From Octopus bimaculoides (lineage: Eukaryota), in NCBI RefSeq assembly GCF_001194135.2, contig NC_068982.1:61099217-61134015 (forward strand): DNA of 34,799 nucleotides, given 5' to 3'. Shown one piece after another: positions 3,148 to 33,745 of the stretch; the first letter of the stretch is position 1, and every line of letters starts with the position of its first letter. The notes below the pieces were generated by a model. The model worked only from the letters and a program-made list of their open reading frames with translations. It made no database searches and was not told where the DNA came from. Position numbers and translations under genes: made by a program.

Positions 3148-3420
3148 CATCATCATCATCATCATCACCATCACCATCACCATCACCATCACCATCACCA
3201 TCACCATCATCGTTTAACGTCCACTTTCCATGCTAGCATGGGTTGGACGATTTGACTGAGGACTGCCGAACCAGATGGCTACACCAGGCTCCAATCTGAT
3301 TTGGCAGAGTTTCTAAAGCTAGATGCCCTTCCTAACGCCAACCACTCCGAGAGTGTAGTGGGTGCTTTTACGTGCCACCAGCAACGGCCACGCTCAAAAT
3401 GGTGTATTTTACGTGCCATA
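3148..3420 (-). mobile_element. RTE-type LINE 3' UTR with (GAT)n tail (family C), cut by a gap
   Basis: Homologous to 10581-11080, which carries the ORF2 C-terminus; (CAT/CAC)n tail on the plus strand and a 3' hairpin. Confidence 0.75.
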
Positions 3421-4057: not shown

Positions 4058-4398
4058 ACCTTTTATTTGTTTCAGTCATTAGACTGCAGCCATGCAAGGG
4101 CACTACTTTGGATTTTTAGCTGAATGAATCAACCCTAGTGCCTTATTCTATCAGTCTCTTTTGCCGAACCACTAAGTTACAGGGATGTAAACACACCAAC
4201 ACCAGTTGTCAAGCGGTAGTGGTGGGACAAACACAGACACAAAGAGACACACACATAGTTTCAATTTCCCAAATCCACTCACAAGGCTTTGGTCAGCCCA
4301 AGGCTATAGTAGAAGACACTTGCCCAAAATACCATACAGTGGGACTGAACCCGGAATCATGTGGTTGGGGAGCAAGCTTCTTAACACACAACCAGTCA
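4058..4398 (-). mobile_element. SINE family B, near full length
   Basis: Collinear with 8557-8965; tRNA-like head at the right end. Confidence 0.8.
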
Positions 4399-7163: not shown

Positions 7164-8556
7164 ATCTTATAACCAACTCTAAGTTCATGTAAATAAGTAA
7201 CATAAGATCTAACATGAAATTTGGTAAAGAATTTTCTTTTACCCCTTTTTAATGTTAAATTCAGGAGTTCAATTAACTTCCTGGCAAAAAGAAAGAAAGA
7301 AATTAAATTTGCTCCATTGATATGAATATTATTTGACATCAGCACTACCTGAAAGAAGTCACTGAAATATAAACCGACCAGAGTAGGTTCAATTTCTGAT
7401 TACAGATGTGATAGCACTAGACTTTATTGAAAAATCATATTAGATAGGGAAAACTGGAACACTGTAAAGCCACCCTGCTGAGATAATGGCTGATGGAAAA
7501 AGTCGCTGATCTAATATTGGCACTTATTTATTGATTCTTTCGACTGCAACAGTGAAATACATACATCACTTTTGGATAATTCAACAAATACCTCTTACAA
7601 CTAAGTTTGTTCTGAGTTACAACTTCAATTTCTTCCTCAAGTTGATGCTACACATACAATGAACCAAACTCAATTCCTTCCTCTTTAACATCTATCAACT
7701 GATTTCAATTAATCAATTGGGATTAAGTATAAGTTCACTTGCGCTAAGCCTTATTATTTACTATTTCTTAAGGATTGAACTGCCTCTGAAATCAAACTTG
7801 TTGAAACGAGGGAGCCGTTAACACTGAAACCCTAATAATTAAACTGCCTAAATGTTTAACATATTAGATAATATCTACACCCCTAATATATCTACATACA
7901 ATATTCTTGAGAATCTTTGACAAAAAAAAAATAGGATACATTATTAGACGTACACATCTTTGATAATTTACAAGTGAAGATGGATACACCAATTACATAT
8001 GCATGTTTTGCTTGTGTATGTTTGTTTGCACATTGTGTGTGTAGTATGTGTGTGTGAGAATATGTGTATGTGTGTGTGTGGGTGTATACAAGTATGTGTG
8101 CGCAGGTGGTGGAAGAAGGCATGATTGACGAGAACATTTGTTGGAATGTATGTACATATAACGAGTCAAATAAATAAATAAATAGAATCTAAAAACTTAG
8201 AATGTCAGGTATGCTATGAATGATTAGAGAAATATGATGGGACTGAGGCAGGAGTTAGGGATGTGATGTAGTTTATTTAAAGCAAGAACTAAAGATCACT
8301 GATGAATGTTTGACACTCCCATCTTGTGTTCAGAAAATTTGAACTTACTAAGACTGGAATTTGAGAGGTGGGTTGTTGCAAAGTTCCACCACCAAAACAA
8401 AGCAAATGTGGGGTAGAGAGAGAGAGAGAGAAGAGTATAAGTGAATATAGTCTGAAGGACAATGAAAATAGCCACCCATGCAAAAAGAGACTAATGTTAC
8501 AGTTTTAAAGAAATCGCTTTCCAAAATCCTGAAAATAAATACAAATTCTTCAAACC

Positions 8557-8772: not shown

Positions 8773-8807
<35 letters not shown>

Positions 8808-8965
8808 CATATATACGATGGGCTTCTTTCAGTTTCCGTCTACCAAATCCACTCACAAGGCTTTGATCAGCCCAAGGCTATAGTAGAAGACACTTGCCTA
8901 AGGTGCCACGCAGTGGGACTGAACCCAGAACCATGTGGTTGGTAAGCAAGCTACTTACCACACAG
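8557..8965 (-). mobile_element. tRNA-derived SINE family B, full-length and young-looking
   Basis: Minus strand: GTGTGGTAAGTAGCTTGCTTACCAACCACATGGTTCTGGGTTCAGTCCC head, CCTTAGGCAAGTGTCTTC core, internal (TA)n(TG)n, tail of GAGTAAAA repeats. Confidence 0.85.
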
Positions 8966-9872: not shown

Positions 9873-10164
9873 TTCTCTTTTTCTCCTTAAATTAATATCA
9901 TGCTTCATATAGAGGAAGAATTTGCCAAAATCCACAGATGATTTTTATGAATACAGTACAAAAATATGTTCAATCAGTGGCAATTGAGAACTTCCTGTTA
10001 CACATGCACACGCACGCATGCACACACACACACACACATACATACATGAACAGTCCTCAAACATATGTAGAATATAGGTATATGTACACATACACACACG
10101 AATGAATGAAGATATGTGTGTATGTCTGATTGTTGGTATGCTCTCTCTCTCACTCTATATACAT

Positions 10165-10290: not shown

Positions 10291-10580
10291 ATCATGCATA
10301 TCTATAAATACACATACACAAACTTAAAAAAACACATATTCACAAACACAATATATGAAAAAAACACATGTATCTGTATTTTAATATGTATGCCTTGATT
10401 TTGCAGTTAATTCCATTTTGATAATATATTTCATATATATCCTTGCTTAAACCTTACCTTAGCCCTACTGAGCCATTCTTGTCTACTTTACATGGGATGT
10501 AGGTTCTTGATGAATTTGATGAATATTTGCATACACACAGAAACACATATGCCAGTAGAGATATATATATATACATACTT

Positions 10581-11080
10581 ATCATCATCATCATCATCTA
10601 ACATCCGTTTTCCATGTTGGTATGGGTTGGACGGTTAGACCAGAGCTGGCATGCTGGAAGGCTGCACTAGGCTCCAGTCTGATTTGGCATGGTTTCTACA
10701 GGTGGATGCCTTCCCTAATGCCAATCACTTTGTGCTGGGGTGCTTTTAAATGGCACTACACAGGCACTTTTGCATGGCACTGCTCAGGCGCTTTCATGTG
10801 GCACCACATGGGGGATTTTTACATGGCACAGCCACAAATGTTTTACACCACTAGCAGAATTGGTTGCTGCAGGGTACACGTCTTGTTGAGTAAGGCCAGG
10901 CACAAGGTATCTGGGTCCTTTTGCCATCTCACCTGAAAGGTTCAGGGCCATTCTTGAGTACTTCATCCCATGTTTTCTTGGGTTTCCCACTTCCACATGT
11001 TCCATCCACTTTGAAAGATTGCACTTCTTCATGGAGCTGTCGACATCCATCCACATCACATAACCAAACCAGCATAGTCT
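10581..11080 (-). mobile_element. RTE-type LINE 3' end (family C): ORF2 C-terminus, 3' UTR and (GAT)n tail
   Basis: Frameshifted translation RLCWFGYVMWMDVDSSMKKC...KVDGTCGSGKPKKTWDEVLKN matches the RTE pattern 'RLRWFGHV.RM...VEG...GRPRKTW.EV'. Confidence 0.85.
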
Positions 11081-12945: not shown

Positions 12946-14438
12946 GTTATTTTGTTTATATATATTTGTATGTATAAGCAGCTTCTAAACAGAGACTGAT
13001 TTTAGGATGGTACCGTTGATAGGACTTCTTGATGTTCACTGAACAACACAGCTATCACAAATATATGACTATTTTGCTACCCATTAAAAAAAATTTTTCT
13101 TTGTTAAATAAGTCATTAGTCAAATAGGCAAATCGTCAATCATTAGGACTCTTTTCTGACCCCTGATATGTCTCACCTTTTCTTTATCTCTTCCAGTGTT
13201 ACTGCAAAAGATCCTGCTCAACTGAACATGTTAATTGTATGCCATCTACATAAACACACATTAACCTTCCTTTTCTTTCATCAGCCTCAGCTGATGTACA
13301 AGTCATCTGAAACACTTCACTTAATCAACCCTTTACAAACTACAAATCATGCTTTCACTCCAGCAGATATTCAAACTAAGTATCTACGACGTTAGTCACA
13401 TCAATGCTTTCGTATCCATCCTGTTTAGAAGCTATGGATATTCTGTTGTTGTCGCTGCATAAATTAGGGTTGTAACAATGAATGACATCTCTCTTATAAC
13501 TTCATTCATTTAGTTGTTTTTTGGGGTTTTTTTGTAAAATTAATAGTTAGGAATGTAGTCTCTTCTGTCGCAGAGATTTCAAGAATTGTGACAGAGATGT
13601 TGATAGGACAAATATATCAACAGTTTAAATTTCTTTACTGTGAACATGAGAAGTTTCAGGTGAAAAACTTCCCAAGCTACTGTTAAGTCCCCAAAAGATA
13701 ACCAAAGATCACCCCAACAATATGCTCAAATTTACATCAACTTTATCTAAAGAAAATGCACATATAAGATGCCCAGGATGTTCATTGGGATATTATACCA
13801 ACATACTTACTCCTACACGTATGGATTAGAACAAATATACACCTGCATTTGAATACAACTAGATTTGTCTATATATGTAAATATACATGCATGTAGATAT
13901 GCAAATATAAAACTGTGCATGCTATTATGCACAGAGTTATACATAGACATATAAATATATTTACACACACACACATATATAAATGTGTTTATGAATGGTT
14001 TATGTAGGAATTACTTAATCTCTAGGTTCTGAAGAAATAAGAAAGATTACAAGTAAGATGGCAGATTATGTTAGTTTATGAAAAATAGATTAACTTATTA
14101 AACAAGTGAGGTTGTGGGAGATAAGGTGGTACAACATAGGTGCTTATATACTGGTGAGAATAAACTGAAAGTGGCATTTCATGAATGGAAACATATACAA
14201 CACAAGGAGTACATGCTACTCTATATTCTATAGAGGAAAATGCAGAAGTTGGTGCATATATGCGGTAGTTTTTGAAGTTGCAGCTTGTGTAAAGATTAAG
14301 AGTTATCTGGACACATATAGCATACTTGATAAGTTAATTAGTCGTAGCTCAGTTGGGTCAAGATTTGTATCGGATCTCATAATTACTAAATATTAATAAA
14401 TATTATCAGAAATTAAACTGTCTGTCAGGCTGTCTGCT

Positions 14439-14444
<6 letters not shown>

Positions 14445-14487
<43 letters not shown>

Positions 14488-14490
14488 TTT

Positions 14491-14535
<45 letters not shown>

Positions 14536-14536
14536 T

Positions 14537-14571
<35 letters not shown>

Positions 14572-14588
14572 TTCTCTCTCCCTCTCTC
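14445..14588. repeat. (TC)n/(CT)n pyrimidine microsatellite
   Basis: Seen directly. Confidence 0.95.
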
Positions 14589-14689
14589 ACATGTACGCCT
14601 CCATGCAAGGCATATATATATGTGTGTGTGTGTTTGTATACACACATACATGTAAGGCCCAAGCATGACTGTAGACACAAGCATGGTTA

Positions 14690-14850
14690 TGTATGCATCC
14701 ATGATTGGGTGGTTTAGAAGTTCATTTCCTAACCACATGGTCCTGTGTTCAATTCCACTGCACAACATCTTGAGCAAGTGTCTTCTACTAAAACCCTGGG
14801 TCAGCCAAAAGCTTGTAAGTGGATTTAGTGGACAGAAACTGATAGAATAT
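14690..14850 (+). mobile_element. SINE family B 5' half, diverged
   Basis: CCTAACCACATGGTCCTGTGTTCAATTCCACTG..CTTGAGCAAGTGTCTTCTAC. Confidence 0.7.
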
Positions 14851-14873
14851 GTGTGTCTAACAACTTATATATA

Positions 14874-14906
<33 letters not shown>

Positions 14907-15289
14907 ATATATATATGCATATATATACACTTACAAACATTGTTCTCACAAAGAAGAGTTGTAGTATTAATCAGTCTAAAGTGAGCAAATATTTGAGTTG
15001 TATGCTGTAATGGAATCATTCAATAACAAAGGCAGTCAACTAATCTTCAGTCTTTATATATTCTATTATTCTTAAAATCATATCTGCCAACGTACCATGA
15101 GGAACATCTACAAAGACATAACATAATTAATTAAACATTTATGAACTTCAAATATAAGGGAATATTTACCCTTTTCTACCAATATTGGTAGTCAATTACA
15201 TCAATGACAAACTGGTATTGTCTCAAACAATTTGTGATGCTCTTGTGATCATGATGCCATCACAATGTTCAGTGCTTGCTATGTAGTAG

Positions 15290-15471: not shown

Positions 15472-15632
15472 AGGCACAAGCATGGCTGAGAGGTAAGATG
15501 TTTGCTTCCCAACCACATGGTTCTGGATCCAACTCATTGCATGACACTTTGGGCAAGTGTCTTCTACTATTGCCTTGGGCTGACCAAAGCTTTGTGAGGG
15601 GATTTGGTAGACGGAAACTGAAAGAAGCCTAT
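15472..15632 (+). mobile_element. SINE family B 5' half
   Basis: AGGCACAAGCATGGCTGAGAGGTAAG head, CTTTGGGCAAGTGTCTTCTAC, GACGGAAACTGAAAGAAGCC. Confidence 0.75.
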
Positions 15633-15770
15633 CATATATATATATATATATTAGATAATTAAACAAATGGTTTACACCTGGTAACTTACTGGTAAAGTAC
15701 AGTCACTTTCACATGTCCATTATGTATATGGTAAATAAAAAACGGAAGATGGAATATACGAGAATTTATT

Positions 15771-16279: not shown

Positions 16280-16689
16280 TCATTCCCACTGCATTGTGCA
16301 AAAGTACATTTATATGCATGCAGGCATCTTGAGAGTCTTTCAGAAATCCTATTAATGATCTTTTCATTGGTCCACAGAATAGACAGGGGTTCCTTGGAAC
16401 AGAGTTGGCATCTCCTGGAAATGATACTGTATTGTTTCATGTGCCTTACTATGGACTAAGTTACAACTTAATTATGGATTCTCTTAAAGCTGGCGACATG
16501 GTTACACTAACAATTCTTAAATGAATCAGCCATCTGCCCAATGTAAACATACAATTCTCCCCTTGTGTGAATGGTACATTTATATACAAGATTTGTATTC
16601 ATAAAGAGGTTCATCAATGGGCATTTTGATTTATCTCTGTTATAAGCATTTGTCATATCTATTTGTATACATGGCAGTTCTGACTCCAT
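16280..16689 (-). pseudogene. GIY-YIG endonuclease domain of the Penelope-like element (in-frame stops, frameshift)
   Basis: 'NLVYKCTI...YVYIG' (GIY-YIG), 'SFK.[R]..NH..SF', and C-terminal CxxC...C.H typical of PLE endonucleases. Confidence 0.8.
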
Positions 16690-16711
16690 TTTCCAATGTT
16701 GTTACATGTAC

Positions 16712-17122
16712 TATAGGGCTTTCCTATAAGTAGGTTATACCCCTTGGCTAGGCAGCGCTCCATGTAGACAATTAAACTTCCGCAGACTATCCACGCTATT
16801 GTTATTGTTTTACGTCTTATCATGGTTATAAAGCAGGTCGATGATTTAGCTATCGAAGTACTTACTGTGCCTGAGTTAAAGAAATATTTAAGATTATATG
16901 GACAGTATGTTACTGGAAGAAAGGCGGACTTGACTGAAAGGTTGAAAGGTATAAAAATTCTGTCGATGAAGAATGTCAACAAAGTAAATTCATCGGACGA
17001 TAAGTCTGAAGTATCGGACGATACTTCAGACAGGAATAAGCAGAAGCTTATATCTCCTCTCAGTGTCTACATGGAGCGCCGCCTATCCAAGGGAGATAAC
17101 CTACTTATAGGAAAGCCCTATA
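16712..17122 (+). mobile_element. 411-bp non-autonomous DNA transposon (59-bp TIRs, probable TA TSD) nested in the PLE and carrying a SAP-domain ORF fragment
   Basis: TIRs 16712-16770 and 17064-17122 match at 55/59; ends TATAGGGC...GCCCTATA; it interrupts the PLE coding region between RT and endonuclease. Confidence 0.85.
16822..17063 (+). pseudogene. Truncated ORF with an N-terminal SAP DNA-binding motif (16861-16944)
   Basis: LTVPELKKYLRLYGQYVTGRKADLTERL fits the SAP pattern L.V.ELK..L...G....G.K..L..RL; the ORF runs into the right TIR. Confidence 0.75.
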
Positions 17123-17199
17123 TCATAAGCATTTGTACTATTACAATTTTGGACACAATTGGGGCTTTACATTGTGGTTTACATCTCCTTTGTTGGTAT

Positions 17200-17700
17200 T
17201 TAGTTGCATATGTCCACTAGATCAGGTAGGTGGGTTATTGAACCTTTGTCGCATTTTACTATGCAATGCATAAGCTGCTCTAAATTAGCAGAGTTAGCAT
17301 AGGATACCTTCATGGTGTGCCAATTAAAAATAGCATGATATCGATAAAATTTAGGAAAACATTTATCAAAAGTGGCAAAAATTTTTCCAGTAATCTTGGC
17401 TGAAACATGCAAACCGAAAATTGGGTTGAACCAGAGGACATCCTGATTTCTATATCTGTTGTTTAGATTAATGCATCTAGTGTGTTGTACAGGATTGGAA
17501 TAATTTACAGTGTTACAAGCAGCTGGAATACTATGTTGCATGTGTCTATGAGTTTTCATTGGTAGTTCATTGTCTTGACCAATTCTTCCTGGCCTGTATT
17601 CTCTGAGTGAGTTCTCATACCGTGATGTTGTGATGGTGTACAATGTGCATTACTATTGGAGAAATTACCAATGTTGTGTATGCCTGTTTCTTGTATATAT
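17200..17700 (-). pseudogene. RT C-terminal/thumb-linker region of the Penelope-like element
   Basis: 'WFNP.F...V...I..K.F...DK.FPK....H.IFN..T.KVSY' pattern characteristic of PLE polyproteins. Confidence 0.8.
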
Positions 17701-18019
17701 TGAATTTTTTTCACGTTACCCAGCCCTAGGTAAAGCAGCTTTATAATAAGTTGCATGTGATGCGAAAATTTTATTAGCAGATAATCTAGAAATTCTTGTA
17801 GAAATATTAACTAGTCCCCATATTATCAAGAGTGGGTGGTTGGATGCTACATTTATGTACTTAATATGAACATTTGGCTTATGAAATGATTCAAATAATC
17901 CAGTATCAAGACAGAAGGTAGTGTCAAGAAAATTTACACTGTATTGCTAGATGTGTCAAAACGATTATTGTGATTAATGATAAATTCTTGTATACTCCAT
18001 CTTCTGTCTTTCGTTTACT

Positions 18020-18236
18020 ATCATCATCATCATCATCGTTTAACGTCCACCTTCCATGCTAGCATGGGTTGGACGATTTGACTGAGGACTGGTGAAACCG
18101 GATGGCAACACCAGGCTCCAATCTAATTTGGCAGAGTTTCTACAGCTGGATGCCCTTCCTAACGCCAACCACTCAGAGAGTGTAGTGGGTGCTTTTACGT
18201 GTCATCCGCACGAAAACGGCCACGCTCGAAATGGTG

Positions 18237-18243
<7 letters not shown>
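18020..18243 (-). mobile_element. RTE family C 3' UTR with (GAT)n tail
   Basis: Near-identical to 3200-3420. Confidence 0.8.
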
Positions 18244-22295: not shown

Positions 22296-22752
22296 ATCAT
22301 CACCATCATCATCATTTAATAGCTGCTTTCCATGCTGGCATGGGTTAAACAGCTTGATTGGAACTGGCAAACTGGAGAGCTGCACCATGATCCAGTCTGA
22401 CTTTGGCTTGGTTTCTACAGCTGGATACCCTTCCTAATGACAACCACTCCAACAGTGTAGTGGGTGCCTTTTATGTGTCACCGGCATAGGTGCTTTATAT
22501 GTCATCAGTATGGGTGCTTATACATGTCACAGGCACAGATGCTGTTATGTGTCACCAGCACTGGCCACAACTATGATATCATTTGGTTTAACAGGTTTTC
22601 TCAAGCACAGCAAATCACCAAAGGCTACGGTCACTTGTCATCCTCTCCATGAAACCCCACATTCAAATATCAAGCTTCACCACCACATCCCATGTCTTCC
22701 TGGGTCTACCTCCTCTACAGGTTCCCTCCACAAAGTTTGGCATTTCTTTATG
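22296..22752 (-). mobile_element. RTE family C 3' end with ORF2 remnant
   Basis: Minus translation KKCQT-VEGTCRGGRPRKTWDVVVK; 3' UTR and (GAT)n tail as in 10581-11080. Confidence 0.8.
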
Positions 22753-25173: not shown

Positions 25174-25225
<52 letters not shown>

Positions 25226-25395
25226 CATATATATATGCATATATACAACAGTCTTCTTTCAGTTTCCATCAACCAAATCCACTCACAAGGCTTTGGTTGA
25301 CTTGAGGTTACAGCAGAAGCCCAAGATGCCAAGCAGTGGGACTGAACCTGGAACCATGTGGTTGGGAAGCAAGCTTCTTACCACACAGCCATGCT
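24955..25395 (-). mobile_element. SINE family B, full length with expanded internal (CA)n(TA)n
   Basis: Collinear with 8557-8965. Confidence 0.85.
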
Positions 25396-25987: not shown

Positions 25988-26489
25988 NNNNNNNNNNNNN
26001 NNNNNNNNNNNNNNNNNNNNNNNNNNNNNNNNNNNNNNNNNNNNNNNNNNNNNNNNNNNNNNNNNNNNNNNNNNNNNNNNNNNNNNNNNNNNNNNNNNNN
26101 NNNNNNNNNNNNNNNNNNNNNNNNNNNNNNNNNNNNNNNNNNNNNNNNNNNNNNNNNNNNNNNNNNNNNNNNNNNNNNNNNNNNNNNNNNNNNNNNNNNN
26201 NNNNNNNNNNNNNNNNNNNNNNNNNNNNNNNNNNNNNNNNNNNNNNNNNNNNNNNNNNNNNNNNNNNNNNNNNNNNNNNNNNNNNNNNNNNNNNNNNNNN
26301 NNNNNNNNNNNNNNNNNNNNNNNNNNNNNNNNNNNNNNNNNNNNNNNNNNNNNNNNNNNNNNNNNNNNNNNNNNNNNNNNNNNNNNNNNNNNNNNNNNNN
26401 NNNNNNNNNNNNNNNNNNNNNNNNNNNNNNNNNNNNNNNNNNNNNNNNNNNNNNNNNNNNNNNNNNNNNNNNNNNNNNNNNNNNNNNNN
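25988..26489. other. Assembly gap
   Basis: N run. Confidence 0.95.
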
Positions 26490-26525
<36 letters not shown>

Positions 26526-26589
26526 TTTATCATTATTATTATTATTATTAACGAAACTGCAAAAACATCTCAAAAATATCACTATAAAA

Positions 26590-26650
26590 TGCTACTCAGA
26601 GTTTCACGTTTACGTTCGGCAGGAATGGGAATATGAAACTCTGAGTAGCA
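26590..26650 (+). other. Hairpin with a perfect 17-bp stem extending to 28 bp with G-U pairs; pre-miRNA-like candidate
   Basis: TGCTACTCAGAGTTTCA (26590-26606) / TGAAACTCTGAGTAGCA (26634-26650); the structure is certain, the function is not. Confidence 0.6.
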
Positions 26651-27037
26651 GGTGTTTATCATAATTTCCCCAACATTTGCTCATAACCAGTACAGTACAT
26701 AAGTACAGTACCAGCCAAACCACTGTACTTGAAGCAGACTGGTAAATCTGAAGAGCTCTACACCAAACAGTAGCAGTCATACATCTAATTGTACACACAA
26801 CATACAAGATATAAACACATACACACATATCAAAACAAATAATGAATGAGCAAAACATTTGGCATCATTCTAGAACATTTAATTAATCATACAAACATAG
26901 TGCAGGGTAGGTATAAGTAAAATATGCTACAGCTGTTTCTAGAATAGCTAAGCAGGTGAATCATATGTTATCAAGTAAAGAATTCCAGGTAAGCTAAGTA
27001 CTCCATCATCAGAGAGAGAGAGAGAGAAATAAGAAAA

Positions 27038-31344: not shown

Positions 31345-31707
31345 ATTTTTTTACTTGTTTCAGTCATTAAACTGTGGCCATGCTGTGACACCACGTTGAA
31401 GGGTTTTAGTCAAACAAACCAGCCCCAGTACTTTTTTTTTTAACTCTTATTCTATTAGTCTCTTAGGTTAAACAGTTAAATTACAGGAACATAAACAGAC
31501 CAACACTTTTTGTCAAGTGGAGGTGAGGAACACAAACAGAAAAACACACATATGATGGGATCCTTTCAGTTTCTGTCTACCAAATCCATTTACAAAGCTT
31601 TGATTGGCCTGAGACTATAGTAGAAGACATTTGCCTAAGATTCCATGCAGTGGAATTGAACTGAGAATCATGTGATTGGGAAGCAATCTTCTTACCACAC
31701 AGTCACA
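31345..31707 (-). mobile_element. SINE family B, full length and diverged
   Basis: Collinear with 8557-8965. Confidence 0.8.
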
Positions 31708-32985: not shown

Positions 32986-33745
32986 TATTACCAATAACAC
33001 AATGGATGAGACCAAGAATGACCTTCTCTTTTATTAAAACATTGGATGCAATGACGAAATGCCTGATTCCTTTTCAAGTGAAAATGAAAGTAATGAGAAT
33101 CTTGTAGGTTTTGAAGTGAACTAAACAAAATTACATTTTTTTTTTTTTTAAATTTACTGTATCTTCTTATTTCAATGTTTTGAAAATTTTTGTTTTGAAC
33201 AATTCTTTTATTCTTTTACTTGTTTCAATCATTTGACTGCAGCCATGCTGGAGCACCACCTTGAAGGATTTTAGTTGAACAAATCAATCCCAGGACTTAT
33301 TTCTTTGTAAGCCTATTACTTTTTCTTTCAGTTTCTTTTGCCAAACCGCTAAGTTACGGGTACATAAACACACCAACACTAGTTGTCAAGTGGTGATGGG
33401 AGGACAAACACACACACACAAACACACATATATACACACACAACAGGCTTCTTTCAGTTTCCATCTATTAAATCCACTCATAAGGCTTTAGTCAGCCTGA
33501 GGTTATAGAAGAAGATACTTTTCCCAAGGTGCCACAAAATAGGACTGAACCTAGAACCATGTAGTTGGAAAGCAAGCTTCTTACCACACAACCACGACTG
33601 AATTGGTGCAGCCTGTTAACAACTAAATTTTAAAGTATCAAATTGAATTTCTGTTTTAGGAAAAGTTTTTAAACATGACTTTTTTTCTCCACCAAAACTT
33701 TACCTTCAATATAAAGGTACATCATTTATGCCCCAAAATACGGTA
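32986..33745 (+). mobile_element. 3' end of a pogo/Tc2-type DNA transposon, interrupted by a SINE
   Basis: Remnant C-terminus MDETKNDLLF...SSENESNENLVGF* (cf. 'LDGTEDD.L....EF.GF'); terminus TATGCCCCAAAATACGG followed by TA (33744-33745). Confidence 0.55.
33205..33597 (-). mobile_element. SINE family B, full length
   Basis: Collinear with 8557-8965. Confidence 0.85.

What the first reader, a model, noticed from the sequence alone, without database searches (positions are those of the whole stretch)
16712..17122. SAP-domain-carrying TIR element nested in the Penelope element
Seen: a 411-bp insert with 59-bp TIRs (55/59), ends TA-TAGGGC...GCCCTA-TA, retained CpGs suggesting it is younger than its host, and an ATG-initiated ORF with a clear SAP motif that runs into the right TIR. 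Established: SAP is a chromatin/DNA-binding module, and SAP domains occur in KDZ (Kyakuja-Dileera-Zisupton) transposases. Inference: this is an internal-deletion derivative of an autonomous DNA transposon whose termini I cannot match to a superfamily I know, so it may be an undescribed family or a gene-fragment-capturing MITE that could express a small DNA-binding peptide.
Basis: partly seen in the sequence, partly recalled or inferred. Interest (0 to 1): 0.75.

Follow-up and report, generated by a model that had tools for sequence, protein, structure and literature searches.

The report
Octopus ISL2EU transposon deletion remnant
The 411-bp insert is a real but ordinary non-autonomous remnant of an ISL2EU-type (PIF/Harbinger-related) cut-and-paste DNA transposon in an octopus genome, and its "SAP" reading frame is just the first 80 codons of that transposon's second gene.

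Summary
There is a 59-nt inverted repeat (55/59), a TATA on each flank, an ATG ORF with a Pfam-significant SAP domain, and far more CpG than the surrounding DNA.

The insert is an internal-deletion derivative of a DNA transposon, but not one of an unknown or KDZ/Zisupton-like kind.

- **Octopus copies.** All database matches to the ORF are Octopus bimaculoides copies (82-95% identical). Longer copies continue into a SWIM-like zinc finger.
- **Full-length relatives.** These occur in bivalves and gastropods (best match Sinanodonta woodiana, 61%). They are 565-609-aa SAP + SWIM + YqaJ-exonuclease proteins.
- **Gene neighbourhood.** In three mollusc families this gene lies beside a convergent THAP + HTH_Tnp_4 + DDE_Tnp_4 transposase gene. 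Both sit between inverted repeats homologous to the window's (TAT-AGGGC(T/A)TTCC.ATAAG). This two-gene layout defines the published ISL2EU group of the PHIS superfamily.
- **Target duplication.** Eight independent insertions fit a 2-bp AT duplication in a T|AT|A target. No empty site could be obtained.

The window copy keeps both ends, the 5' leader and codons 1-80, and has lost everything else, including the transposase gene. It is a known kind of element and of low interest.

The parts
16713..16714 (.). Left copy of the inferred 2-bp target-site duplication (AT); the T at 16712 is flank (target T|AT|A)
   Evidence: Flank comparison of 8 independent insertions in 4 mollusc families. AT is the published ISL2EU duplication. 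No empty site was obtained, so this is an inference.
16715..16770 (+). Left terminal inverted repeat (AGGGCTTTCCTATAAGTAGG...)
   Evidence: the repeat finder I1. Homologous to the ends of the autonomous S. woodiana, Gigantopelta and Haliotis elements.
16775..16793 (+). Subterminal motif AACTTCCGCAGACTATCCA in the 5' leader of ORF2. It contains an ACTTCCG core that recurs near both ends of the related autonomous elements, so it may be a promoter or transposase-binding element.
   Evidence: Alignment A1; sequences read. Its function is inferred only.
16822..17061 (+). Retained first 80 codons of the element's ORF2 (SAP-SWIM-YqaJ protein): SAP domain plus a Ser/Asp-rich linker
   Evidence: 3/80 differences from the O. 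bimaculoides consensus. BLASTP to the N-terminus of the 565-aa S. woodiana protein P0020, aa 4-77, E=6e-16.
16858..16947 (+). SAP domain (aa 13-42 of the ORF)
   Evidence: PF02037, E=1.9e-5, 24.6 bits > cutoff 23.9. The same domain is found in full-length relatives with E down to 1e-10.
16992..17030 (+). Imperfect 21-bp tandem duplication inside the linker (codes SDDKSEV / SDDTSDR)
   Evidence: the repeat finder D2, 83% identity.
17061..17063 (.). Internal deletion junction. Longer octopus copies continue ...LISPL-GEVLLDLCKLPNFTDNDIYNYLV...; here ...LISPL is joined directly to the inner edge of the right repeat.
   Evidence: Comparison of the window ORF with P0003, P0016 and P0001.
17064..17119 (-). 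Right terminal inverted repeat
   Evidence: the repeat finder I1; alignment A1.
17120..17121 (.). Right copy of the inferred AT target-site duplication; the A at 17122 is flank
   Evidence: Same as for the left copy.
17062..17220 (+). Read-through tail of the ORF: right repeat plus host DNA up to the stop at 17218-17220. It is not homologous to any part of the ORF2 protein.
   Evidence: relatives diverge from the window ORF at this point.
16320..17930 (-). Host sequence (approximate limits, interrupted by the insert): a decayed, CpG-poor remnant on the minus strand with a GIY-YIG-like motif (LVYKCTI...YVYIGQ). This is consistent with a Penelope-like element but is not confirmed.
   Evidence: Conceptual translations. 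No Pfam hit and no homologues.

Best explanation
Window 16715-17119 is a 405-bp non-autonomous internal-deletion copy of an ISL2EU-group transposon (PHIS / PIF-Harbinger-like superfamily) of an octopus.

Autonomous ISL2EU elements carry two convergent genes between their inverted repeats:
- ORF2, read inward from the left end. In this clade it is a SAP + SWIM-like + YqaJ-exonuclease protein.
- A THAP + HTH + DDE transposase, read inward from the right end.

This copy keeps the two repeats that the transposase recognises, the ORF2 leader, and ORF2 codons 1-80. It has lost the rest of ORF2 and the whole transposase gene. It can therefore have moved only if a full-length element supplied the transposase in trans. 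That would be cut-and-paste with a 2-bp staggered cut at T|AT|A.

It inserted into an older, CpG-depleted repeat and has since accumulated few changes. The SAP ORF is a by-product of where the deletion fell. Any peptide made would be SAP + linker + about 50 unrelated residues.

Shown: the repeats, the SAP domain, the homology of ORF and termini to autonomous two-gene elements, multiple copies in Octopus, and the CpG excess. Inferred: trans-mobilisation, the AT duplication, origin by deletion from an octopus autonomous copy, and the absence of a function for the peptide.
For: 1. The repeat and the SAP domain are real.
2. There are 14 O. bimaculoides proteins 82-95% identical to the ORF. Longer ones extend into ...LPNFTDNDIYNYLV...HVHSIEYHDVSESCSHC...SADCNC.
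3. An exhaustive HMMER search with that extension found 77 relatives. The long ones (P0020, P0028, P0029, P0035 and others) are SAP + SWIM-like + YqaJ/viral alkaline exonuclease. All named ones are molluscan.
4. The window ORF aligns to the N-terminus of P0020 (E=6e-16).
5. At the P0020 locus (S. woodiana, L001) a 4570-bp element holds that gene plus a convergent gene with DDE_Tnp_4 (1e-43), HTH_Tnp_4 (2e-14) and THAP (3e-8). It is bounded by TATAGGGCATTCCAATAAGT... repeats that match the window's (81% over 48 nt).
6. The same two-gene layout and related termini occur in Haliotis (L016-L019) and Gigantopelta (L020).
7. The published definition of ISL2EU is two ORFs (a DDE/HTH/THAP transposase and a YqaJ protein), an AT duplication, presence in animals only, about 4.8 kb, and TIRs of 6-259 bp. 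Four Crassostrea families are listed (PMC4482050; PMC9179366).
8. Of 16 insertion ends, 15 read TAT and one reads AAT. Positions beyond that vary.
Against: - No octopus autonomous copy or octopus transposase was seen, because the genome could not be searched.
- No empty site was obtained. A Spy-like insertion without duplication into TAT^ATA is therefore not excluded.
- The AT reading rests partly on one variant flank (L003) and on assuming conserved spacing between families.
- Under that reading the repeats start AGGG or TCGA rather than the 'usually GG' of published ISL2EU, and the target flanks are T/A rather than A/T.
- The copy number of this exact 405-bp form is unknown.
- Whether Repbase or Dfam already hold the family could not be checked.
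Confidence: 0.9

Rival explanations
1. The truncated SAP ORF is itself functional. Deletion copies that keep the ORF2 leader and SAP domain would express a small DNA-binding peptide. That peptide would regulate the family's transposition, like the truncated KP repressor of P elements, or would have been co-opted by the host.
For: - The copy keeps the leader with the conserved ACTTCCG motif and an ATG in good context (A at -3, G at +4).
- The SAP domain is identical to the octopus consensus.
- Many octopus copies keep an open N-terminal ORF.
Against: - Three changes in 80 codons is what a young neutral copy would show (the repeat arms differ at 4/59).
- The database ORFs are a biased sample, because only open frames get annotated.
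- The ORF ends in about 50 residues of repeat and host read-through, with no element-derived terminator.
- ORF2 starts about 100 nt from the left end, so any deletion derivative keeping the left 350 nt would contain it.
Confidence: 0.06
2. This is the first reader's version: a derivative of an undescribed or KDZ/Zisupton-like superfamily, with SAP as part of the transposase.
For: SAP domains have been reported in Zisupton transposons (statement in PMC8557442). No catalogue comparison (Repbase, Dfam) was possible here.
Against: - In the full-length relatives, SAP belongs to a YqaJ-exonuclease protein.
- The transposase in the same elements is THAP + HTH_Tnp_4 + DDE_Tnp_4.
- No KDZ domain was hit in any of ten full-length relatives.
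- The flanks do not allow an 8-bp duplication.
Confidence: 0.02
3. This is a gene-fragment-capturing (Pack-MITE-like) element that picked up a piece of a host SAP gene.
For: A short element bounded by inverted repeats contains a fragment of a protein-coding sequence.
Against: - The fragment is colinear with the element's own ORF2, from the same start position about 100 nt inside the left repeat, in four mollusc families.
- The leader upstream of the ATG is conserved between octopus copies (P0014).
Confidence: 0.02

Closest known systems
ISL2EU (also IS4EU) group of the PHIS / PIF-Harbinger-like superfamily, e.g. ISL2EU-15_CGi of Crassostrea gigas (5351 bp, 48-bp TIR, THAP/HTH_Tnp_4/DDE_Tnp_4 transposase of 537 aa, YqaJ ORF2 of 536 aa; PMC4482050 Table S2)
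   Same: - Relatives that share the window's termini and ORF have exactly this two-gene architecture and size (4.6-6.9 kb).
- The host is an animal (a mollusc).
- The TIR length is within the published range.
- The flanks are compatible with the AT duplication in a short AT-rich palindromic target.
   Different: - The window copy is a 405-bp deletion derivative without either complete gene.
- The target flanks are T..A (TATA) rather than A..T (AATT).
- Under the AT reading, the repeat begins AGGG rather than GG.
- In the papers read or found here, ORF2 is described only by its YqaJ exonuclease domain (as a DNA-binding protein or as an exonuclease). Its SAP and SWIM-like modules are not mentioned.
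MITEs and other internal-deletion derivatives of DNA transposons
   Same: Short, bounded by inverted repeats, lacks a transposase, depends on one supplied in trans, and folds into a long hairpin (-173 kcal/mol, z=-14.5).
   Different: It still carries a recognisable 240-nt coding fragment with its start codon. The abundance of this particular deletion form is unknown.
PIF/Harbinger elements with their Myb/SANT-like second ORF
   Same: The transposase fold is the same (DDE_Tnp_4), and there is a second gene encoding a DNA-binding protein.
   Different: Harbinger makes a 3-bp TWA duplication and its ORF2 is Myb-like. Here ORF2 is SAP-SWIM-YqaJ, and a 3-bp duplication is excluded because the flanks read TAT on the left and ATA on the right.
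Zisupton / KDZ transposons
   Same: A SAP domain occurs in a transposon-encoded protein.
   Different: The protein is different (KDZ-type transposase versus YqaJ exonuclease), the transposase is different, and Zisupton's 8-bp duplication is not present here.
P-element KP repressor (a truncated protein from internally deleted copies)
   Same: An internally deleted copy retains the N-terminal DNA-binding module of an element-encoded protein.
   Different: KP derives from the transposase itself and its repressor activity is demonstrated. Here the fragment comes from the accessory ORF2, and no activity or expression is known.

Membership tests
ISL2EU group (PHIS superfamily) | Transposase with a PIF/Harbinger-type DDE domain (DDE_Tnp_4), usually with HTH_Tnp_4 and THAP | tested here: met
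   Met by proxy; the window copy has no transposase gene. Elements with homologous termini and ORF2 encode it in S. woodiana L001 (DDE_Tnp_4 1e-43, HTH_Tnp_4 2e-14, THAP 3e-8), Haliotis L016/L018 and Gigantopelta L020. An octopus transposase was not seen.
ISL2EU group (PHIS superfamily) | [quoted passage not shown] | tested here: met
   The window ORF is the N-terminal 80 aa of this protein (BLASTP E=6e-16 to P0020). Full-length relatives hit YqaJ with E from 4e-12 to 8e-19.
ISL2EU group (PHIS superfamily) | 2-bp target-site duplication 5'-AT-3' | tested here: inconclusive
   AT is the only duplication consistent with all 8 insertions compared. Fifteen ends read TAT and one reads AAT, and the outer positions vary. 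The palindromic target means only an empty site can prove it, and none could be obtained. No duplication at all (Spy-like) is not excluded.
ISL2EU group (PHIS superfamily) | Terminal inverted repeats of 6-259 bp, usually starting GG | tested here: met
   The repeats are 56-59 nt. They start AGGG under the AT reading and GGG under a TA reading. The published 'GG' is only 'usually'.
ISL2EU group (PHIS superfamily) | Found in animals only; multi-copy | tested here: met
   All close matches are Octopus bimaculoides, with at least 19 gene models. Relatives are in bivalves and gastropods.
KDZ / Zisupton transposons | KDZ-type transposase; 8-bp duplication (Zisupton) | tested here: not met
   No KDZ Pfam hit in ten full-length relatives, which carry YqaJ instead. 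The neighbouring transposase is DDE_Tnp_4. The 8-bp flanks atgtacta and tatcataa do not match.
Tc1/mariner (TA duplication) | TA duplication with a DD(E/D) mariner-type transposase | tested here: not met
   A TA duplication outside TAGGGC is contradicted by S. woodiana L003 (AA on the left, TA on the right). The associated transposase is Harbinger-type.
SAP domain (PF02037) | HMM score above the Pfam gathering threshold | tested here: met
   24.6 bits against a cutoff of 23.9, E=1.9e-5, aa 13-42.
MITE | Short, TIR-bounded, non-coding for transposase, high copy number of a homogeneous form | tested here: inconclusive
   The first three properties are met.
Penelope-like element (host of the insertion) | Reverse transcriptase plus GIY-YIG endonuclease | tested here: inconclusive
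   A GIY-YIG-like motif (LVYKCTI..YVYIGQ) and an ..SNHP.. block are visible in minus-strand translations. There is no Pfam hit at E<=1 and no database homologue.

The most novel reading that the evidence does not exclude
Deletion copies of this ISL2EU family that keep the ORF2 leader and SAP domain are transcribed. They would produce SAP-only peptides that compete with the full SAP-SWIM-YqaJ protein at the element's DNA, giving a self-limiting, KP-like brake on transposition. Alternatively such peptides could be raw material for host co-option. A by-product would be the first functional clue to what the unexplained second ORF of ISL2EU does.
Probability: 0.06. Interest if true: 0.5.

Novelty: new member of a known kind. 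Interest (0 to 1): 0.18.

Why it matters
Mostly this is a matter of housekeeping.

- **Annotation.** It assigns an unclassified octopus repeat to a known group. It also explains at least 19 'SAP domain-containing' or 'uncharacterized' proteins in the O. bimaculoides proteome as transposon fragments. One of them (P0045) is a chimeric gene model fused to host exons.
- **ISL2EU ORF2.** In this mollusc clade the ISL2EU second ORF has a SAP - SWIM-like - YqaJ architecture.
- **Conserved ends.** The first ~45 nt of the termini and a subterminal ACTTCCG motif are conserved across cephalopods, bivalves and gastropods. This marks likely transposase-binding or promoter sites.
- **Experimental material.** S. 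woodiana has near-identical (99.4-99.7%) intact two-gene copies. These could serve to test what the YqaJ protein contributes to transposition, a question the ISL2EU literature leaves open.

Tried and rejected
- Expression and population-level empty sites are untested.
- **Empty site from the window.** No second copy of the host repeat exists in the window; only SINE-like repeats do.
- **Empty site from host protein paralogues.** The third and last homologous-protein search, using the host translation, returned nothing.
- **Empty site from other loci.** Flanks of the S. woodiana copies have no paralogue among the fetched loci.
- **Metagenome scan.** A degenerate terminal pattern gave 9 hits. 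None has the TAT flank or the downstream conserved bases, so they are chance matches.
- **Viral-contig scan.** No hits.
- **Exact look-ups.** The window ORF and octopus P0016 are not on record.
- **Rfam.** No match over the insert.
- **Paper searches.** Zisupton/SAP/SWIM and ISL2EU/SAP/SWIM/octopus were swamped by unrelated papers.
- **8-bp (hAT-like) duplication.** Considered because the end TAGGG fits a hAT-like terminus. Rejected because the flanks do not match.
- **3-bp and 4-bp duplications.** Rejected.
- **The 24-nt direct repeat 16635/17118 as a long target duplication.** Rejected. Similarity is a 12-nt core plus weak extension, and it reflects a repeated ..TNAY.. segment of the host.

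Full report
**1. The observation**

Window 16712-17122 is bounded by a 59-nt inverted repeat, 55/59 complementary. A 26-nt probe from its end finds only the two arms in the whole 34.8-kb window, against 0.00 expected from shuffles. The ends read gtac-TATA-GGGC...GCCC-TATA-tcat.

An ATG at 16822 opens a frame with a SAP domain. Pfam PF02037 scores E=1.9e-5 and 24.6 bits, just above the 23.9-bit gathering cutoff, over aa 13-42. The frame runs through the right repeat into the flank and stops at 17220, giving 132 aa.

CpG observed/expected is 0.86 inside the insert and 0.29 in the rest of the window (0.16 and 0.29 in the 3-kb flanks). That is 14 CpGs where 4.7 are expected, P=3.6e-4.

**2. Organism and copy number**

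All 14 database proteins similar to the ORF are Octopus bimaculoides entries, 82-95% identical. Most are named 'SAP domain-containing protein'. A second search added five more. The window ORF differs from their consensus at 3 of 80 residues. The element is therefore a multi-copy octopus repeat.

**3. What the ORF is a piece of**

Longer octopus copies do not stop at ...KQKLISPL. They continue GEVLLDLCKLPNFTDNDIYNYLVLRMKAKQQLRSGIFYHDRYVHSIEYHDVSESCSHCIVRCLVIPS...VTGNVHSADCNC.

An exhaustive HMMER search with such a copy (P0016) found 77 relatives. The long ones (565-609 aa) carry three modules:
- an N-terminal SAP domain;
- a CxC...CxH SWIM-like finger (sub-threshold in Pfam at E=0.003, but called SWIM-type by UniProt);
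- a C-terminal YqaJ / viral alkaline exonuclease domain (E down to 8e-19).

All the named ones come from molluscs: Sinanodonta, Mizuhopecten, Mercenaria, Mya, Solemya, Ruditapes, Haliotis and Gigantopelta. The window ORF aligns with residues 4-77 of the best one, S. woodiana P0020 (E=6e-16). The 'SAP peptide' is therefore the first 80 codons of a SAP-SWIM-YqaJ gene.

**4. The element that gene belongs to**

At the P0020 locus (L001) the gene starts about 100 nt inside a terminal repeat, TATAGGGCATTCCAATAAGT.... A convergent gene ends at the mirror-image repeat 4570 bp away. The gene has two exons, with the intron splitting the SWIM finger. The convergent gene has DDE_Tnp_4 (1e-43), HTH_Tnp_4 (2e-14) and THAP (3e-8) domains.

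The S. woodiana termini match the window's at 81% over 48 nt. In a four-way alignment the blocks TATAGGGC.TTCC.ATAAG and CCC.T...TAGG are invariant. Three further S. woodiana copies are 99.4-99.7% identical to L001.

The same pair of genes, between related termini, is found in two other families:
- Haliotis: TAT-TCGACTTTCCGAAAAGT, 6.9 kb.
- Gigantopelta: TAT-AGTCCTTTCCAATAAGGT, 5.6 kb.

**5. Comparison with what is known**

Han et al. 2015 (PMC4482050) define the ISL2EU group of the PHIS superfamily by these features:
- a 5'-AT-3' duplication (target A|AT|T);
- TIRs of 6-259 bp, usually starting GG;
- a mean length of about 4.8 kb;
- presence in animals only.

Their table lists four Crassostrea families with the Pfam architecture seen here. 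PMC9179366 gives the same definition. The coding architecture, size, host range and TIR length of the window element's relatives all fit this definition.

SAP has been reported in Zisupton, but here SAP sits on the YqaJ protein, the transposase is Harbinger-type, and no 8-bp duplication is possible.

**6. Target-site duplication**

The target is palindromic, so the window alone cannot separate four readings: a TA duplication outside TAGGGC, AT outside AGGGC, TA outside GGGC, or a 4-bp TATA duplication.

Eight independent insertions in four families were lined up on the conserved TTCC block. Fifteen of sixteen ends are preceded by TAT, and one (S. woodiana L003) by AAT. The next position outward varies freely.
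- L003 (AAT...ATA) contradicts the outer TA reading and the 4-bp reading. With copies about 0.3-0.6% diverged, a mutation at those few sites is unlikely.
- Haliotis (TAT-TCGAC...GTCGA-ATA) contradicts the inner TA reading, if spacing is conserved between families.
- A 3-bp duplication is impossible, because the flanks are TAT and ATA.

The one reading that fits everything is an AT duplication in T|AT|A. This is the ISL2EU duplication with different flanking preference. The element proper is then 16715-17119.

This is an inference. An insertion without duplication into TAT^ATA, as in Spy elements, would look the same, and I could not obtain an empty site.

**7. How the window copy arose and works**

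Relative to longer copies, everything from codon 81 of ORF2 to the inner edge of the right repeat is missing (junction at 17061-17063). The missing part includes the SWIM and YqaJ parts and the whole transposase gene.

What remains is:
- both repeats;
- a leader with the motif AACTTCCGCAGACTATCCA (16775-16793);
- the SAP segment.

The ACTTCCG core of that motif recurs upstream of both genes in the S. woodiana and Haliotis elements.

The copy can only have moved using a transposase supplied by a full-length element. That step, and the existence (now or in the past) of an autonomous octopus copy, are inferred and not shown.

The element sits in a decayed minus-strand repeat with a GIY-YIG-like motif. 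The CpG excess and the few differences from the consensus indicate that the insert is much younger than its host.

**8. Is the SAP peptide meaningful?**

Nothing requires it to be. ORF2 starts about 100 nt from the left end, so any deletion copy that keeps the left 350 nt contains SAP. The frame ends in about 50 residues of repeat and host read-through. Three substitutions in 80 codons is what a young neutral copy would show.

I give that reading about 6%.

**9. Verdict**

This is a real feature, correctly seen, and correctly guessed to be a deletion derivative. It belongs to a described group (ISL2EU), not to a new or KDZ-like one. I could not check Repbase or Dfam, so I rate it a new member of a known kind, of low interest.

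Noticed in passing
window 16712-16770 / 17064-17122; L001 9898-9945 and 14420-14467; L016 7904-7945; L020 7959-7995: The first ~45 nt of the element ends are recognisably conserved between a cephalopod, a bivalve and two gastropods (81% over 48 nt between Octopus and Sinanodonta), while ORF2 is only 41-61% identical. This means either strong constraint from transposase binding or horizontal transfer among molluscs.
   Followed up: partly
window 16775-16793; L001 ~9958-9975 and ~14365-14385; L016 ~7975-7990 and ~14735-14765: A subterminal ACTTCCG(C/G) motif (the reverse complement of an ETS-like CGGAAGT core) lies upstream of the start codon of both convergent genes in the autonomous elements. 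It is retained on the left side of the window copy. It may be a promoter or binding site.
   Followed up: partly
L018 2560-17677 (Haliotis rufescens JALGQA010000006.1): A full two-gene ISL2EU copy lies inside the span (presumably an intron) of a gene whose product hits the abalone egg-lysin family (PF01303).
   Followed up: no
L002 vs L004 (S. woodiana CM100982.1, ~1.15 Mb apart); L016 vs L017 (H. rufescens, ~33 kb apart); L005 vs L006: These pairs of element copies share identical flanks. They are segmental or assembly duplications rather than independent insertions.
   Followed up: partly
O. bimaculoides proteins P0001-P0019, P0045 (UniRef A0A0L8...): At least 19 annotated octopus 'proteins' are fragments of this transposon's ORF2. 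P0045 (278 aa) is a chimeric model that joins the SAP fragment to unrelated host-like Cys-rich and acidic sequence. Several models skip different internal stretches, either through predicted splicing or real deletions.
   Followed up: partly
window 16635-16658 and 17118-17141: A 24-nt direct repeat (79%, 12-nt exact core) lies in the host on either side of the insert. On the minus strand both copies code ..TNAY.. within Cys-containing stretches (PNCVQNCNSTNAYD / LPCIQIDMTNAYNRDKSKCPL). This suggests an internal duplication in the host repeat and not a target duplication.
   Followed up: partly
window 15492-15657 and 18017-18243: Two short interspersed repeats interrupt or flank the host remnant and recur across the window. 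The first matches 8792-8959 (86%), 4257-4383, 31550-31696, 33445-33585 and 25220-25395. The second matches 3191-3411 (90%), 22296-22483 and 10576-10729. They are probably SINE families.
   Followed up: no
window 26001-27000; 14393-14960: There is an extremely AT-rich kilobase (GC 0.16) with TA-type microsatellites. There are also GA/CA dinucleotide microsatellites that create long spurious RE/TH-repeat ORFs.
   Followed up: no
window 16992-17030: An imperfect 21-bp tandem duplication in the ORF2 linker (SDDKSEV / SDDTSDR) forms a small local hairpin in the predicted RNA fold.
   Followed up: no
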